Below, in pieces: positions 27,962 through 33,440 of a DNA stretch of 64,000 bases. Each line of letters begins with the position of its first letter. Within the stretch, counting starts at the first letter, position 1. The translations under genes and the position numbers were made by a program. Where the stretch lies: the NCBI RefSeq assembly GCF_022045235.1, contig NW_027266265.1:38130001-38194000 (forward strand). The letters run 5' to 3'. The DNA comes from Haliotis cracherodii. Lineage: Eukaryota. Under the pieces are notes generated by a model, which saw only the letters and a program-made list of their open reading frames with translations, had not been told where the DNA came from and made no database searches.

Positions 27962-28914
27962 CTCAAACCAAAACATAAGTCTCTTTTCAATATATAAACA
28001 TGGCATGGTCGCATTAGAACATAGTTTCTCTCTCGAGTAATTGAGCTGTACGGTCAGTTAAACTGTACCGGTTACACTGAAAATATGTTCTAATTCTACG
28101 AACAGAAGGATATTTAAAGATGAGAGAACATTTTAAGAAATGTTCGTGTCGTAATTGCATATTTTGTAGCGCGAAGACTTACGTCTTCCTGATAAGAAAG
28201 ATGATAATGTGCGTGTTGGGAGGCGTTAATAAAATCCTTGATTCATGGGCATCGAGAGTGGTTACGCTTGAAAACCAGTTTATATTAATCGACAAACGTC
28301 ATATTCAACGCTTGTTGCGATTGGTTGTAAAAACGCGCCGTACACGGTTATTTACATCAAACCGTCCACACAAAATAAGCGATACATTTTCCCATTGAAA
28401 TAACAAAGCCTCGTTTTCGATCCTGAGGAGAAGACGCTTCAGTCACTGTCAACGCTGAGGGAACGTTTTGGATTTGTGTGGTGGGTAGACGTTATAATTT
28501 TCCTGTATGCACTTTACACATTTCAATAAACAATAATCAGGATTATATTCACGACAAGAACACACGTTAATAACAAGCAGTTAATGAGAAAATACACTTG
28601 AAATGTTCGATGCGAGCGGTAGAGGACATTTTGGACGAATTCACTTGGTTCCCTATGGGGGTGTGCAATTTAGGAAAGGGAGGTAATTCTCATTACGGTA
28701 GAGAACTCTCGTTTGTTTACCTTATATGAGTTCACTTGTGTTTATTTTGAAACAACCACATCAAGTAATTCAGTTTTTTACAACAATATATTGTTAATAC
28801 GCTGTTATGTTGTTAAACAGAACGTTGACTTCTATCTAGATTACTATGACAACTAGTTTGAATACTATCACCGCGACTATTTCAACATATGATCACTCCT
28901 CAATTTTGGTTGAT

Positions 28915-28916
<2 letters not shown>

Positions 28917-28959
<43 letters not shown>
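28917..28959. repeat. (CA)n microsatellite inside the transposon 5' region
   Basis: Direct reading. Confidence 0.95.
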
Positions 28960-28961
<2 letters not shown>

Positions 28962-29889: not shown

Positions 29890-29980
29890 TATGTGTTGCC
29901 TGTTTTGAAGACCCTGCCCTGATATTTCAAACTATGCCTGGAACTGGAACTAATCTTGGAACATGTGACAGAGCTCAAAT

Positions 29981-32296
29981 ATGAACTGTTCATTTTATAC
30001 TTTGATCATTTTGATATTTGTTAGCAACTCCAAATGCCCAATGGAAAGTCCACTCATGGCTCTAGGGGGTGAAGGGGATATACTAAGTATAACCTTAAGA
30101 GTGTCAAAACTAACACTAATAGAAGAATACAAGAGGCTAACACCGACAGGGAACAGCTTCAGTAAAGATATTTGTAATGGGGTCATTGGTTTTGTCTGCA
30201 ACAAACATCATCTTGATAGCTCATTTGTTTTGTTTGACAAAGTATCACCTGTCCTACAGTCTTACTTAAAGAAACTAGTATCAAAGCATGATAAGACTAA
30301 GAGAGAGGGGGGAAAGCAATTTAAACACCTACTTGTAACCTGGGAAAATGAATTCTATGATCTCAAAGTTGTTGTTTCTGAACACTGTTTGCCATCAATG
30401 TTTTCTAAATTAGAAAAAGAGAGAAACTTAAAAAAGGAGTATTATCGTAAATATAAATCAGTGATCAAAAAGGCTAAAAGGCTGCAATCTAAAACTGTGT
30501 CTCTTAAAAAAAGAATTCGAAAGATGTCTACAAAGCCCTCACATTTGGATGGGAAGAAGTATCGAATACTGAAAGTGTCGTCCAATGAAAACACTTTGTC
30601 GAGATCACAGCAATACAAACGAAAACACATGCTGGTAGAAGACTGTAAAAAAGCCCTGACTTTCATGAACATTTATGAACTAGACCCATTATCAGTACAG
30701 GCACAAAGGACAGATGGTCAAAAGTGTTTAGTTTCTTTAACTGAAAACAATGTAACCAGTCATAAGGAAAATATGGACACTAATTTAGATAGACTTTTGC
30801 ATGTCAAAGATATGCAAAATATTTCAAACAAAGCATATCATGAGTTATCAATGACAATACCGTTTTTACCAAGGTCACATGTTTTGTCTCAAAAGATAAA
30901 AGAATACAATGATACTTTCAAAATAGTTAACACTCCAGATCCTAGTTTTGGTGTACAGCAATCCCTGAAAGATATATTAGGTAAATGTGTTTCACACATT
31001 TTGACAACAGGGGCTAAAGAGAAGCTTCTTGAAAGTAAACATCTGCATGTTAAACTAACTGGTGATGGTACTGAACTTGGCAGGACAAAAAAATTAATAA
31101 ATTTCGGGTTCACCATACTCGAGGAGGAAAACTGTCTATCTGTTAATGGCAATTACTTACTCGCTGTATTTTCAGGGAAAGAAACGTACCAGAATGTTTC
31201 AGATGCACTTACAGAAATCATTGATGAAGCCAGAGAATTAGACCATGTAGGTGTTCTTGGACAAATATTTCAGGTGACTTTTTTTCTGGGTGGTGATCTT
31301 AAGTTTCTGAACATGTTCTCAGGAATATCATCATGTGCTTGCAACTACAGTTGTGTGTGGTGTAAATGTCCATCAAAAGACCGATATGACACCACTATGC
31401 AGTGGTCAGTTAGTGACGTTTCTCAGGGAGCAAGAACTGTACAGGAAATATCTATGATGGCCACAAGAAAGTCACATAACTTTAACTGTGTTCATCCTCC
31501 CCTGTTTGACTTTATTCCAATCAATAGAAGAGTTCCAGATCTGCTTCACTTGTTTTTGCGCATATCCGATCAATTGGTAAAGCATCTTATCACAGAGTTG
31601 AGAGTTTTGGACAATGTCCAAAGGTGTAATAGTGTGTACAACAGAGATAGGTGTTGCAATGTCTCCAGATTTGAAAGATTTGTGCAGGGCCTTGGGGTGG
31701 AATTTCATTTTAAGAATGATAAAGCTTCGGGAAGATTCATTTTCCGTGATTTTACCGGACCAGAACATAAAAGGATTTCCCAGCATATTGTCATTACAGA
31801 TTTTCTTCCTAATCATCCCAAAGTGAAGGAAATCAGCTTTCTGTGGAGTGAATTCTCATCTATCTACTCCATTCTTGGGCAGGGTTCTTTTGAGGAGTGT
31901 GAAGTTGTCTCCCTTAATGAAAGGTGCAAGCAATGGGTACGGACACTTGTGATGGTTTACCAAATTAAAGACGTGACGCCTTACATGCATATCTTAGCAT
32001 ACCATGTCTGTGATATGATAAGACTTCATGGAAATCTGAGATGCTTTTCACAGCAAGGCTTTGAAAAGTTAAACGACAGTGTTACATCATGGTTCTTCCG
32101 CTCAACATGTCACAGGAGTAGGGAAGCATTGAAGCAGGTTATGCTAAAACAAAACAGGATGGTTTCTTCTCAGAGTTTTAGGAGAAGTCCTTTGAAAATA
32201 AAATGTAGTTTGTGTCAAGGGCAGGGTCATAATAGGCGGTCATGTACCAACAAGAATAGAGAAATTGAGTCCGATGGACACCTAGATCTGGCATGA
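29981..32296 (+). CDS. RAG1/Transib/Chapaev-clade DDE transposase (RAG1-core-like), 771 aa, intact; true start may be the ATG at 30041
   Basis: Uninterrupted ORF. Motifs VKLTGDG (D362), GGDLKFL (D439), CVWC (C458/C461), PDLLHLFLRI, TPYMHILAYHV (H670/H675) and FSQQGFEKLN (E695) correspond to RAG1 KESCDG, GYDEK, CTLC, DALH, TNYFHKTLAHV and SEGNESGN. Also a basic LSRSQQYKRK segment and C-terminal CSLCQGQGHNRRSC. Confidence 0.9.
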   Translation: MNCSFYTLIILIFVSNSKCPMESPLMALGGEGDILSITLRVSKLTLIEEYKRLTPTGNSFSKDICNGVIGFVCNKHHLDSSFVLFDKVSPVLQSYLKKLVSKHDKTKREGGKQFKHLLVTWENEFYDLKVVVSEHCLPSMFSKLEKERNLKKEYYRKYKSVIKKAKRLQSKTVSLKKRIRKMSTKPSHLDGKKYRILKVSSNENTLSRSQQYKRKHMLVEDCKKALTFMNIYELDPLSVQAQRTDGQKCLVSLTENNVTSHKENMDTNLDRLLHVKDMQNISNKAYHELSMTIPFLPRSHVLSQKIKEYNDTFKIVNTPDPSFGVQQSLKDILGKCVSHILTTGAKEKLLESKHLHVKLTGDGTELGRTKKLINFGFTILEEENCLSVNGNYLLAVFSGKETYQNVSDALTEIIDEARELDHVGVLGQIFQVTFFLGGDLKFLNMFSGISSCACNYSCVWCKCPSKDRYDTTMQWSVSDVSQGARTVQEISMMATRKSHNFNCVHPPLFDFIPINRRVPDLLHLFLRISDQLVKHLITELRVLDNVQRCNSVYNRDRCCNVSRFERFVQGLGVEFHFKNDKASGRFIFRDFTGPEHKRISQHIVITDFLPNHPKVKEISFLWSEFSSIYSILGQGSFEECEVVSLNERCKQWVRTLVMVYQIKDVTPYMHILAYHVCDMIRLHGNLRCFSQQGFEKLNDSVTSWFFRSTCHRSREALKQVMLKQNRMVSSQSFRRSPLKIKCSLCQGQGHNRRSCTNKNREIESDGHLDLA

Positions 32297-33440
32297 AGTG
32301 CACATATGTGCTAATACTAACTTTTAGACCGGGTGTTCACTTTAATGATAGGATAAATAATCTACCTGATAAACTGAATTTGAACTGAAACATAGTTCAA
32401 ATGAAACAAAGCAGTTTTAATATGTGTGAAGGTTATACACATTTTTTATGCCTAGCATTTCATTTCATATAACATTCCATTATGATTCGTTGGTTAAAAC
32501 ACGTTTTGTGTAGGGTACAATGCTCTTCAAATGAAAAGGGTTTTTTATTTAGTGCTATTGAATGTGACATTGTTTCAGGGAATATTTGAGACGTTTTGTT
32601 AAACTTTTCTGTACATGTAACATGTTTGCACAGACAGCGAATATGAAAGTGTACAAATGGTATTTCAGTAGTGACATTATAAATGATACGATCTGAGACG
32701 GCAAGCCATTATAACAATAATTTAGTCAATATGTTGCACCAATGAAGTTAAGGGTATCAGTAACATGTCTTTTAAAATAGTTTTTACACATTTCACTATA
32801 CATATCACCAAAGAGCAGGTGGGTATGGCTTGGTGAGGAATACACCATGTTAGTTTATGCTGCAGACTGTCAGTAAAGAAAACTTAGTCGGGGTCGATAG
32901 ACATGGCAACTCTCAAACAGTTCAGTTACATTTTAATGCATCACCAGCAACGTCCTATGCAGAAATACGTTTAGTTTATTAGTAAAGGGATTTCTCCATT
33001 GTGTAATAGTGGACGTTCGCTCGGAGGGCAATTTGGTTATCTCAGTTGAAATCACAATCATGATTTTGATTGAAACAGTTCTTCTCCCTAAGTTTAAATT
33101 GTGCTTTGGAAAACTAATATGGGGCAAATATAGTGCCATTGTTTCTGCATTTACCTCTGCAGAACATATTTCCTGTATGGAAATATTAGATGTCTTGAGT
33201 ACCCTCGACTCATGTTTCGATTACTTTTTTTTATAGATTCGTCATTAATAAACATGTTACAACATACACAGATTTGGTCTTATATTCATTAAGCTTATTG
33301 GTGAGTCGATATTCCAGAAATGTTTCTAGAATGAACAGCTTCAATTTACTGTGTAGACACCCCCATAACATGGACTCTCCCATTTCGTTCTGAAAAAGTA
33401 GGTCACGAGACAAAAAGCAGTGATATGTTTTGACTTGATC

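What the first reader, a model, noticed from the sequence alone, without database searches (positions are those of the whole stretch)
27963..33438. Two nested candidate terminus pairs: CAC...GTG with a TA duplication, and an outer TCAA...TTGA pair
Seen: the inner pair is CACTGAAAAT (28075) and CACAGTAAAT (reverse complement ending at 33353), 8/10 identical, with further gapped similarity (tgttc..attcta..aaca) and TA on both flanks. The outer pair is tcaaaccaaaacata (27963-27977) and tatgttttgacttga (33424-33438), 13/15 identical, directly abutting the mariner halves. Known: RAG, Transib, Chapaev and CACTA ends start with CAC; RAG and Transib make 5-bp TSDs. The right inner end CACAGTA resembles the RSS heptamer CACAGTG, but no 5-bp TSD or nonamer is visible. 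Inference: either a CAC-ended element with an atypical 2-bp TSD sitting in a ~195-bp MITE, or an element with non-CAC outer ends.
Basis: partly seen in the sequence, partly recalled or inferred. Interest (0 to 1): 0.75.

Follow-up and report, generated by a model that had tools for sequence, protein, structure and literature searches.

The report
RAG1-like transposon with non-CAC ends
The outer pair of short inverted repeats marks the true ends of a recently active 5.5-kb DNA transposon that encodes a RAG1-like cutting enzyme, yet its ends do not start with the usual CAC and its insertions show no target duplication.

Summary
Both pairs sit at the stated coordinates. Only the outer pair is a terminus. 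In every other genomic copy, homology starts at 27964 (CAAACC...; 7 of 7 non-self left ends) and stops at 33437 (...GACTTG; 5 of 5 right ends). Contigs from other individuals and from another species break at the same bases.

The 111-nt and 84-nt "MITE arms" never occur alone. The left inner CAC exists only in the four young copies; older copies read GGC, CGC, CTC and CGC. A second family, about 65% identical in the gene, ends with the same 13 nt.

The 771-aa ORF folds like RAG1, RAGL and Transib (Foldseek E 3e-15) and keeps D362, D439, E695, CxxC, LH and HxxxxH. It belongs to a large family that Pfam does not annotate. A chromo-like ORF lies upstream. ORF2 is intact in all four 98-99% identical copies.

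The ends read 5'-CAA...TTG-3', not the CAC...GTG reported as invariant for RAGL, Transib and Chapaev. None of the 6 two-ended copies has a target-site duplication. Paralogous empty sites instead show 1 nt missing (two clean cases), 1 or 6 nt missing, or larger gaps. The integration mechanism is inferred, not shown.

The parts
27964..33437 (+). Whole mobile element, 5474 bp
   Evidence: Homology in other copies starts at query base 64 or 65 of 27900-28700 (7 of 7 non-self left ends). It ends at base 738 of 32700-33500 (5 of 5 non-self right ends). Flanks are unrelated on both sides. Unitigs from other runs start at 27964 and end at 33437.
27964..27977 (+). Left terminal inverted repeat, CAAACCAAAACATA
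   Evidence: Matches the reverse complement of the right end at 12 of 14, P about 6e-6. CAAAC is invariant in 8 of 8 left ends.
33424..33437 (+). Right terminal inverted repeat, TATGTTTTGACTTG
   Evidence: Invariant in 6 of 6 right ends. The last 13 nt are identical in the family B copy on C1.
27979..27983 (+). GTCTC, possible second TIR element, positions 16-20 from the left end
   Evidence: This is a lead only: a shared 5-mer arises in 37% of shuffles.
33407..33411 (-). GTCTC on the minus strand, positions 27-31 from the right end
   Evidence: It holds the same position in both family B right ends, while the 10 nt between it and the terminal 13-mer differ.
28075..28084 (+). Inner left CACTGAAAAT, not a terminus
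   Evidence: CAC is present only in the 4 young copies. C3, C80, C2b and C11 read GGC, CGC, CTC and CGC. Homology continues 111 nt further out in all copies.
33344..33353 (-). Inner right ATTTACTGTG, not a terminus
   Evidence: GTG is present in 5 of 6 copies. It is not conserved in family B. Homology continues 84 nt further out.
29188..29889 (+). ORF1, 233 aa from the first ATG, chromo-barrel-like protein
   Evidence: Pfam MSL3_chromo-like E 4.9e-7 (30.1 bits, cut-off 28) and Tudor-knot E 1.3e-4. Two homologs were found. It is intact in 3 of 4 young copies.
29981..32296 (+). ORF2, 771 aa, RAG1-fold DDE transposase
   Evidence: Profile against PDB gives RAG1 at E 5.3e-5. Foldseek ranks 1-48 are RAG1, RAGL and Transib. 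D362, D439, E695, C458/C461, L522-H523 and H670/H675 are conserved. It is intact in 4 of 4 young copies.
28917..28959 (.). (CA)21 microsatellite inside the element
   Evidence: The reads tool skipped repeats at 28906-28972.
27703..27963 (.). Left half of the fossil mariner that was split by the insertion
33438..33643 (.). Right half of the same mariner

Best explanation
Window 27964-33437 is an autonomous cut-and-paste DNA transposon. Its true ends are the outer imperfect inverted repeats: 5'-CAAACCAAAACATA on the left, and the reverse complement of CAAGTCAAAACATA on the right. The inner CAC...GTG pair is a chance resemblance inside conserved subterminal sequence.

The element carries two same-strand genes. 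One is a chromo-barrel-like protein. The other is a 771-aa DDE transposase with the RAG1/RAGL/Transib fold and the CxxC, LH and HxxxxH motifs shared by the CACTA-Mirage-Chapaev-Transib-RAG1 group.

Shown: the boundaries, the TIR, the fold, the intact ORFs in near-identical copies, and the absence of any target-site duplication.

Inferred: the transposase binds the terminal 13-14-mer, and perhaps a second GTCTC element and AACAT repeats. It cuts at the 5'-CA...TG-3' boundaries by the nick-hairpin chemistry of its structural relatives. The excised DNA re-enters the genome without the usual 5'-staggered double strand transfer. That could happen by a blunt or 1-nt 3'-staggered integration, or by end-joining capture at a break. 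Either route would leave no duplication and small target losses.
For: Boundaries
- 7 of 7 non-self left ends start at 27963/27964, and 5 of 5 non-self right ends stop at 33437.
- Flanks are unrelated.
- Unitigs of two other runs of the same species, and one of another species, begin at 27964 or end at 33437 (table 8).
- The TIR matches 12 of 14 at those fixed positions, P about 6e-6.
- A sister family with an intact 748-aa ORF is about 65% identical in the gene. It ends in the same 13 nt, and homology stops there in 4 copies.

No host MITE
- The arms occur in 8 and 6 places, all inside copies.

Inner pair
- The left CAC is present in 4 of 8 copies.
- The pair is statistically ordinary.

Protein
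- The profile hits RAG1 at E 5.3e-5 and amphioxus RAG1L at 0.0021.
- The model has pLDDT 82.7.
- Foldseek ranks 1-48 are RAG1, RAGL and Transib. The best is 3.0e-15, and the next fold, Hermes, is at 1.3e-3.
- Catalytic and zinc residues are conserved in every family member that covers the column.

Recent activity
- Four copies are 98.6-99.3% identical. ORF2 is intact in 4 of 4.

No target-site duplication
- 0 of 6 two-ended copies have one.
- For C3, 19 of 20 SINE paralogs carry one more nt at the site.
- For C80, 5 of 6 neighbouring tandem units carry one more nt.
- For C56, 1 or 6 nt are missing.
Against: - Only six two-ended copies exist, and the empty sites are paralogous repeats, not orthologous or allelic sites.
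- No read-level empty allele was listed (72 joints were not shown).
- C16 has AATGGT on both sides, offset by one T. That could be a 6-bp duplication, although its flanks map about 70 nt apart in the host foldback repeat.
- The window copy is ambiguous: one extra T, or about 16 nt missing.
- The flank of C67 is unique and untestable.
- The left end of the sister family was not reached, so conservation of CAA is shown across families only for the right end.
- The window protein itself hits neither Pfam RAG1 nor DUF1280. The language-model search puts a DUF1280 (Chapaev) cluster first at 0.91. Placement within the group is therefore open.
- No biochemistry supports any step.
- The family is large, with 9703 clusters at E <= 0.001. 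It may already be catalogued in Repbase, which I could not consult.
Confidence: 0.8

Rival explanations
1. A CAC...GTG-ended Chapaev/Transib-type element with a TA (or TWA) duplication sits inside an unrelated ~195-bp MITE. The composite is moved by the MITE's own transposase.
For: The inner pair starts with CAC, matches 8 of 10, and has TA beside it. Only 3.7% of shuffles give a CAC-started pair. In older copies the flanks read TTA and TAA, and both fit the TWA reported for Chapaev3 (passage read in PMC4079192).
Against: No solo arm exists: 8 and 6 places, all within copies. The left CAC is missing in 4 of 8 copies. The sister family shares the outer right arm and terminal 13-mer but not the inner GTG. 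TTA and TAA are not identical. No second transposase ORF lies in the element.
Confidence: 0.03
2. The inner inverted repeat is functional but is not a cleavage site. It would be a subterminal transposase-binding element, the second part of a bipartite, asymmetrically spaced TIR lying 111 and 84 nt from the ends.
For: The block CTGAAAATATGTTCTAATTCTACGAACA is almost invariant in 8 of 8 copies. It has a gapped inverted match near the right end. AACAT is enriched in both ends: 12 occurrences in 2 x 200 nt on both strands, against about 2.9 expected from the element's own frequency. Bipartite asymmetric TIRs are described for RAGL and Transib (passages read in PMC9435367).
Against: The copies are too alike (about 80-99%) to separate constraint from recency. 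The end-to-end alignment is not above shuffles. The motif was chosen after seeing the data. The homologous stretch in family B is not conserved around the GTG.
Confidence: 0.12
3. Integration step, version A. The excised blunt-ended element is captured at chromosomal breaks by host end joining, not by transposase strand transfer. Junctions therefore carry small and variable losses or fillers.
For: Junctions are heterogeneous: minus 1, minus 1, minus 1 or 6, plus 1 or about minus 16, and about minus 70 nt. Copy number is low, with 8 left ends in 1.18 Gb. In vertebrate RAG, non-consensus heptamers release ends to other repair routes (abstract of PMC2875030).
Against: Three of five resolvable sites fit a loss of exactly 1 nt, which looks more regular than random end joining. 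The larger gaps may pre-date insertion. Element ends are intact to the last base in 6 of 6 copies, whereas end joining often nibbles ends.
Confidence: 0.35
4. Integration step, version B. The transposase itself joins both ends to the target with a blunt or 1-nt 3' stagger, so 0-1 nt is lost instead of 5 bp being duplicated.
For: Exactly one nt is missing in C3 (19 of 20 paralogs) and C80 (5 of 6 units), and possibly in C56. Element ends are precise. There is a precedent for a TSD-less eukaryotic DDE transposon, Spy (abstract of PMC4122938). TSD length varies (2, 3, 5 bp) within Transib (sections 14 and 20 of preprint 10.64898/2026.08.26.747230).
Against: The window copy and C16 do not fit a clean 1-nt loss. 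No such geometry is known for this fold. The sample is small.
Confidence: 0.3

Closest known systems
RAGL (ProtoRAG-type) and Transib transposons, and vertebrate RAG1
   Same: Same protein fold: Foldseek E 3e-15 to 2e-11, and TM 0.6-0.68 normalised to the target. The profile aligns the second catalytic Asp with its CxxC, and the HxxxxH with the catalytic Glu, to RAG1. The protein ends in a CxxCxxxGHxxxxC tail, residues 742-755. The accessory gene lies upstream on the same strand, as reported for the alga-borne AanRAGL (passage in PMC9435367). The TIR shares CA at positions 1-2, an A run at 8-10, C11 and T13 with the protostome RAGL consensus CACTWMCAAACKTYKBB (passage in PMC7204232). That is 9 of 13 for the right end by my own count, a resemblance only.
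   Different: The third base is A, not the 'perfectly conserved' C. No 5-bp duplication is seen. There is no Kelch RAG2-like partner; a chromo-like protein takes that place. The window protein does not reach Pfam RAG1; 8 of 28 relatives hit it weakly, best E 1.4e-5.
Chapaev (CMC group; Pfam DUF1280 according to PMC3985635)
   Same: The C(2)C, LH and H(4)H motifs named as Chapaev hallmarks are all present (passage in PMC4079192). The nearest language-model cluster carries DUF1280 in 51% of its members, score 0.91 with 190 of 256 features shared.
   Different: Chapaev ends are described as invariably 5'-CAC...GTG-3' with 3-4-bp duplications. Neither holds here. DUF1280 is not hit by the window protein. 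Only 2 of 28 relatives hit it, weakly.
CMCT clade as defined in PMC12730594
   Same: It has the shared C(2)C and H(3-4)H motifs, and 5'-CA...TG-3' termini 'in most cases' (passage read). The outer ends fit that looser rule.
   Different: The clade is said to make 2-5-bp duplications. None is seen here.
Spy elements (PIF/Harbinger-related)
   Same: They are eukaryotic TIR-bearing DDE transposons without target-site duplication (abstract of PMC4122938).
   Different: Spy belongs to an unrelated transposase group. It inserts precisely between AAA and TTT without altering the site. Here no target motif is evident and 1 nt or more is lost.
Nozomi-related Transib elements of flies (preprint 10.64898/2026.08.26.747230)
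   Same: They show that TIR first bases and TSD length (TA, 3 bp, 5 bp) can vary while the Transib core stays conserved (sections 14 and 20 read).
   Different: Those elements still make duplications. They have no chromo-like partner in the text I read.

Membership tests
RAGL / Transib (RAG1-like transposons) | RAG1-type RNase H DDE core with CxxC and HxxxxH zinc ligands | tested here: met
   D362, D439, E695, C458/C461 and H670/H675 are conserved in every A1 member that covers the column.
RAGL / Transib (RAG1-like transposons) | TIRs begin with 5'-CAC (passages in PMC7204232) | tested here: not met
   CAA is found at 8 of 8 left ends and 6 of 6 right ends. It is also at the family B right end on C1.
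RAGL / Transib (RAG1-like transposons) | 5-bp target-site duplication | tested here: not met
   0 of 6 two-ended copies have one. Paralogous sites show losses instead.
RAGL / Transib (RAG1-like transposons) | RAG2-like Kelch partner gene (RAGL only) | tested here: not met
   The only other sizeable ORF matches chromo/Tudor-knot models and no Kelch model.
RAGL / Transib (RAG1-like transposons) | Match to Pfam RAG1 at its curated score | tested here: not met
   The window protein has no hit at E <= 1. 8 of 28 relatives have weak hits. 0 of 10 sampled representatives hit at E <= 0.01.
RAGL / Transib (RAG1-like transposons) | Nick-hairpin cleavage chemistry | not testable with these tools
   Inferred from the fold only.
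Chapaev (CMC) | C(2)C, LH and H(4)H motifs | tested here: met
   The hallmarks are as stated in PMC4079192.
Chapaev (CMC) | Invariable 5'-CAC...GTG-3' termini | tested here: not met
Chapaev (CMC) | 3-4-bp target-site duplication | tested here: not met
Chapaev (CMC) | Match to Pfam DUF1280 | tested here: inconclusive
   The window protein has no hit. 2 of 28 relatives hit at 0.0046. The top atlas cluster carries DUF1280 in 51% of its members.
CMCT clade (PMC12730594) | 5'-CA...TG-3' termini | tested here: met
CMCT clade (PMC12730594) | 2-5-bp target-site duplication | tested here: not met
   The left arm occurs in 8 places and the right arm in 6, all continuous with element interior.
Spy | Precise insertion between AAA and TTT | tested here: not met
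   Flanks of the 6 copies show no such motif.

The most novel reading that the evidence does not exclude
This is a lineage of RAG1-fold transposases that cuts at CAA-ended, not CAC-ended, repeats. Its DNA re-enters the genome without the staggered double strand transfer that defines all its known relatives. Re-entry would occur either through a blunt or 1-nt 3'-staggered integration or through host end joining. That would be a natural 'cuts well, does not transpose canonically' state resembling what domestication produced in vertebrate RAG. A methyl-lysine-reader-like partner stands where RAG2 with its PHD finger stands.
Probability: 0.3. Interest if true: 0.8.

Novelty: new variant of a known kind. 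Interest (0 to 1): 0.62.

Why it matters
CAC ends and a 5-bp (or 2-5-bp) duplication are used both to define RAGL, Transib and Chapaev elements and to find them. One of the papers read here required a TSD before accepting a TIR (PMC7204232, methods passage). Such screens would miss a family with the RAG1 fold, intact genes and recent copies that breaks both rules.

Such a family would also show that end recognition and target joining are far more plastic than the catalytic core. If the missing duplication reflects how integration works, the family offers a natural system for a specific question: how does a RAG-type enzyme hand its cleaved ends to repair instead of transposing them? That question lies at the centre of how V(D)J recombination was tamed.

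For annotation, the practical result is simple. The element is 27964-33437. The CAC pair should not be used as its boundary.

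Tried and rejected
Nested-MITE reading: rejected.

Hidden fixed TSD, as with TA or TTAA elements: rejected. The conserved left start (C...) and right finish (...G) cannot be a direct repeat.

Helitron or Crypton-type element as the reason for no TSD: rejected. The ends are inverted repeats, and the only enzyme gene has a DDE RAG1 fold.

Single-sequence phmmer against PDB gave nothing relevant; the best hit was a ribosomal protein at E 0.97. 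Only the family profile reached RAG1.

An empty allele was sought in reads. No joint 27963>33438 appears among the 15 listed. All listed joints are mariner paralogs, and 72 more were not shown.

C67 flank: the repeat match stops 36 nt before the junction, so no paralogous empty site exists.

C16: the AATGGT repeat looked like a 6-bp TSD. The two flanks, however, map about 70 nt apart in 6 paralogs of a foldback repeat. This is left open.

C56: two alignments fit about equally, with 1 or 6 nt lost.

Old fragments:
- C1:2611xxxx shows no readable right terminus.
- C67:4667xxxx has only a weak CAAAC-like left end.
- C19 has no ends.

Family B left end: a CAAATCAAAAGTT motif at first looked like the terminus. 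Homology with the C67 copy runs past it, and for 540 nt more.

A TIR-motif scan of the other family loci gave only A-rich chance hits.

The bacterial promoter and terminator scan is irrelevant to an animal genome.

Lanisha lineage: of the listed papers only one concerns transposons and two a moss genome, and I did not follow it up.

Literature: I found no paper describing a Transib, RAGL or Chapaev element without a TSD, or with a chromodomain partner. Repbase and the papers' supplementary tables could not be consulted. That includes Table S2 of the 2026 preprint and the Chapaev TSD tables, and they may bear on this claim.

Residue numbers of vertebrate RAG1 and its sequence are left out because I hold them only from memory.

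Full report
OBSERVATION. CACTGAAAAT lies at 28075-28084. ATTTACTGTG lies at 33344-33353. They match 8 of 10 as inverted repeats, and each has TA beside it. The outer pair lies at 27963-27977 and 33424-33438 and matches 13 of 15. The sequences just outside it align to adjoining parts of mariner paralogs.

WHICH PAIR IS THE TERMINUS. I searched the window's own genome with 27900-28700, 32700-33500 and the ORF region.
- The left query gave 11 matches. Apart from the window itself, seven carry the element's left end, and all seven begin at query base 64 or 65, that is 27963/27964.
- The right query gave 40 scored matches of 55 candidates. Five non-self matches carry the right end, and all five stop at base 738, that is 33437. 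The rest match only the mariner flank.
- The printed junctions show CAAAC... preceded by T, T, A, A, A, C, T, T. They show ...GACTTG followed by A, T, C, T, G, C. T27963 and A33438 are therefore flank, and the element is 27964-33437, 5474 bp.
- Independent data agree. Assembly-graph contigs of two other runs of the same species lie wholly inside the element. They end exactly at 27964 (one at 27970) and at 33437. A contig from a different species starts at 27964 with 12 differences in 289 nt (table 8).
- At these independently fixed positions the two ends match 12 of 14, P about 6e-6.

THE MITE READING FAILS.
- The 111-nt left arm (27964-28074) occurs in 8 places and the 84-nt right arm (33354-33437) in 6. 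Every one of these is part of an element copy (with 6, 7). No empty MITE exists at BLAST sensitivity.
- In the alignment of ends, the left inner CAC is present only in the four young copies. C3, C80, C2b and C11 read GGC, CGC, CTC and CGC at that place. The right inner GTG is present in 5 of 6.
- Pairs matching 8 of 10 are common between the two ends: 41 observed against 29 +/- 10 in shuffles. A CAC-started pair appears in 3.7% of shuffles.
- The best end-to-end local alignment is not above shuffles, 44 against 38.3 +/- 6.3.

A SISTER FAMILY CONFIRMS THE OUTER END. The ORF search also found loci about 63-66% identical at the DNA level. One, on C1, has an intact 748-aa ORF. Searching with its 3' region showed four other copies whose homology stops at query base 1488-1490. 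The sequence there is ...GATGTTTTGACTTG, followed by unrelated flank. These are the same last 13 nt as in the window's element.

Between the two families the right end keeps two blocks: positions 1-13, and TTTGTCTC at 24-31. The 10 nt between them differ. In the left end of the window's element, GTCTC sits at 16-20, which is 11 nt closer to the tip than on the right. This is reminiscent of the asymmetric, two-part TIRs described for RAGL and Transib (passages in PMC9435367). A shared 5-mer alone arises in 37% of shuffles, though, so it is only a lead. The arm outside the inner GTG (ACACCCC...GACTC) is also recognisable in the sister family, whereas the GTG is not. I could not reach that family's left end.

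WHAT THE ELEMENT ENCODES.
- ORF2 (29981-32296, 771 aa) has no Pfam match. It has 27 relatives, none with a precomputed Pfam domain.
- Their profile finds RAG1 chains first in the PDB (E 5.3e-5, 1.3e-4) and amphioxus RAG1L at 0.0021. It aligns the GGDLKF...CxxC stretch and the YMHxxxxH...E stretch to RAG1.
- The AlphaFold model (pLDDT 82.7, pTM 0.64) matches RAG1, BbRAGL and HzTransib in Foldseek ranks 1-48. The E values are 3.0e-15, 9.9e-12 and 1.9e-11. The next fold, Hermes, is at 1.3e-3.
- D362, D439, E695, C458/C461, L522-H523 and H670/H675 are conserved in all family members that cover those columns. A CxxCxxxGHxxxxC motif ends the protein.
- These CxxC, LH and HxxxxH motifs are shared by the whole CACTA-Mirage-Chapaev-Transib-RAG1 group (passages in PMC12730594 and PMC4079192).
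- A language-model search puts a DUF1280 cluster first (0.91), and DUF1280 is equated with Chapaev in PMC3985635.
- Pfam RAG1 is weakly hit by 8 of 28 relatives and DUF1280 by 2 of 28. Neither is hit by any of 10 sampled representatives at E <= 0.01.
- The family is large: 9703 clusters at E <= 0.001 and 1185 at 1e-30.

I therefore place the enzyme in that group, structurally nearest RAG1/RAGL/Transib, without assigning it to a named superfamily.

ORF1 (29188-29889) matches chromo-barrel models just above Pfam's cut-offs. It has two homologs. This agrees with earlier first-reader notes s1-823161, s1-823186 and s1-823211. I checked those notes only to this extent.

RECENT ACTIVITY. The copies on C16, C67 and C56 are 98.6-99.3% identical to the window's. 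ORF2 is 771 aa in all four, with 3-5 residue differences. ORF1 is full length in three and cut to 192 aa in C56. C3 and C80 are about 84-93% identical and broken.

TARGET SITES. None of the six copies with both ends has a direct repeat at its flanks. A hidden fixed duplication is impossible, because the conserved start (C) and finish (G) differ. I reconstructed empty sites from paralogous repeats.
- C3 lies in an abundant SINE-like repeat. 19 of 20 paralogs have 10 nt between two anchors where the joined C3 flanks have 9, and a T is missing.
- C80 lies in a tandem repeat. 5 of 6 neighbouring units have CA where the junction has only C.
- C56 lies in an old repeat. Depending on the alignment, 1 or 6 nt are missing.
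- The window copy has either one extra T at the left junction, with a separate ~17-nt deletion 4 nt away, or about 16 nt missing. The mariner paralogs are 70-88% alike and indel-rich there.
- C16 lies in a foldback repeat. Its flanks map about 70 nt apart in six paralogs, and an AATGGT on both sides, offset by a T, remains unexplained.
- C67 has a unique flank.

The summary is no duplication in 6 of 6. There are clean 1-nt losses in two cases, a loss of 1 or 6 nt in a third, and two ambiguous cases that involve larger missing stretches.

COMPARISON WITH WHAT IS KNOWN. For protostome and deuterostome RAGL, Transib and RSSs, the first three bases are reported as 5'-CAC without exception, and TSDs as 5 bp (passages in PMC7204232; PMC9435367). 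For Chapaev, 'invariable' CAC...GTG ends and 3-4-bp TSDs are reported (PMC4079192). For the wider clade, 5'-CA...TG-3' 'in most cases' and 2-5-bp TSDs are reported (PMC12730594).

The element meets only the loosest of these rules, CA...TG. Its right end matches the protostome RAGL consensus CACTWMCAAACKTYKBB at 9 of 13 positions by my count: CA, T5, C6, AAA at 8-10, C11, T13. That suggests, but does not prove, a homologous TIR with a changed third base.

A 2026 preprint shows TA, 3-bp and 5-bp TSDs, and G-started TIRs, within fly Transibs (sections 14 and 20 read). Variation as such is therefore known. Absence of a duplication is not reported there. The only TSD-less eukaryotic cut-and-paste group I found is Spy. 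It is unrelated and leaves its AAATTT site intact (abstract). My searches found no Transib, RAGL or Chapaev element without a TSD or with a chromodomain partner. Repbase and the supplementary tables were out of reach.

MECHANISM. Shown: the ends, the fold, the intact genes, the near-identical dispersed copies, and junctions without duplication. Inferred: the transposase recognises the terminal 13-14-mer, and perhaps GTCTC and the AACAT repeats. AACAT occurs 12 times in the two 200-nt ends, against about 2.9 expected; it was chosen post hoc. The enzyme would cut at the CA/TG boundaries as its structural relatives do.

For re-entry I see two options of similar weight. The first is end-joining capture of the excised blunt fragment. 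It fits the heterogeneous junctions and the low copy number. It also echoes the finding that non-consensus heptamers let RAG-cleaved ends escape to other repair routes (abstract of PMC2875030). The second is transposase-made integration with a blunt or 1-nt 3' stagger, which fits the repeated loss of exactly one nt and the perfectly preserved element ends. Neither is tested.

VERDICT. The element is a new variant within the RAG1/Transib/Chapaev group, unusual in its CAA ends and its lack of target duplication. The weakest link is the small number of insertions and the use of paralogous rather than allelic empty sites.

Noticed in passing
window 15665-18746: A 60-bp-period satellite with 52.5 copies and 88% matches. 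It explains the strong C-over-G skew (-0.62) of the 16-18 kb bin. A short related array lies at 19006-19142.
   Followed up: partly
window 19554-20455: An 82-bp-period tandem array with 11 copies and 91% matches.
   Followed up: no
window 27360-27545 and 34190-34300; also 1493, 17423, 18884, 36519, 43982, 52451: An abundant SINE-like repeat with core ...CCCAATTGCGTGGATCGATGCTCATGAT... It occurs many times in the window and in fetched loci. The C3 copy of the element sits inside one.
   Followed up: partly
window 33725-33764 and 33838-33894: Just right of the element, inside the mariner remnant, lies a 15-bp unit TATAACGAACAGGCA repeated 2.7 times. Next to it is a 19-nt inverted repeat that is 95% complementary. 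Together they look like a small inserted MITE.
   Followed up: no
L002/L013 (C16:12605810-12611683) and six paralogs L086-L091: The C16 copy lies in a foldback (long inverted-repeat) MITE-like family with at least 273 candidate copies. The central ~70 nt of that repeat are missing at the insertion.
   Followed up: partly
window 27964-28163 and 33238-33437: AACAT is about four-fold enriched in both 200-nt ends: 12 occurrences on both strands against about 2.9 expected from the element's own frequency. These may be subterminal binding repeats. The motif was picked after looking.
   Followed up: partly
L060 (C1:59351613-59355353), L068, L100-L102: A second family has an intact 748-aa transposase ORF, a region matching the chromo ORF upstream, and a much longer 5' part than the window's element. 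Two copies stay about 93% alike for more than 1 kb beyond where the window's family would end.
   Followed up: partly
runs X10 and X11: Contigs at least 90% alike cover all 30 bins of the element in two other species, so the family is shared by at least three species. I did not ask whether this reflects descent or transfer.
   Followed up: no
L043 (C56 copy): ORF1 is cut to 192 aa in this otherwise young copy, while ORF2 stays intact.
   Followed up: no
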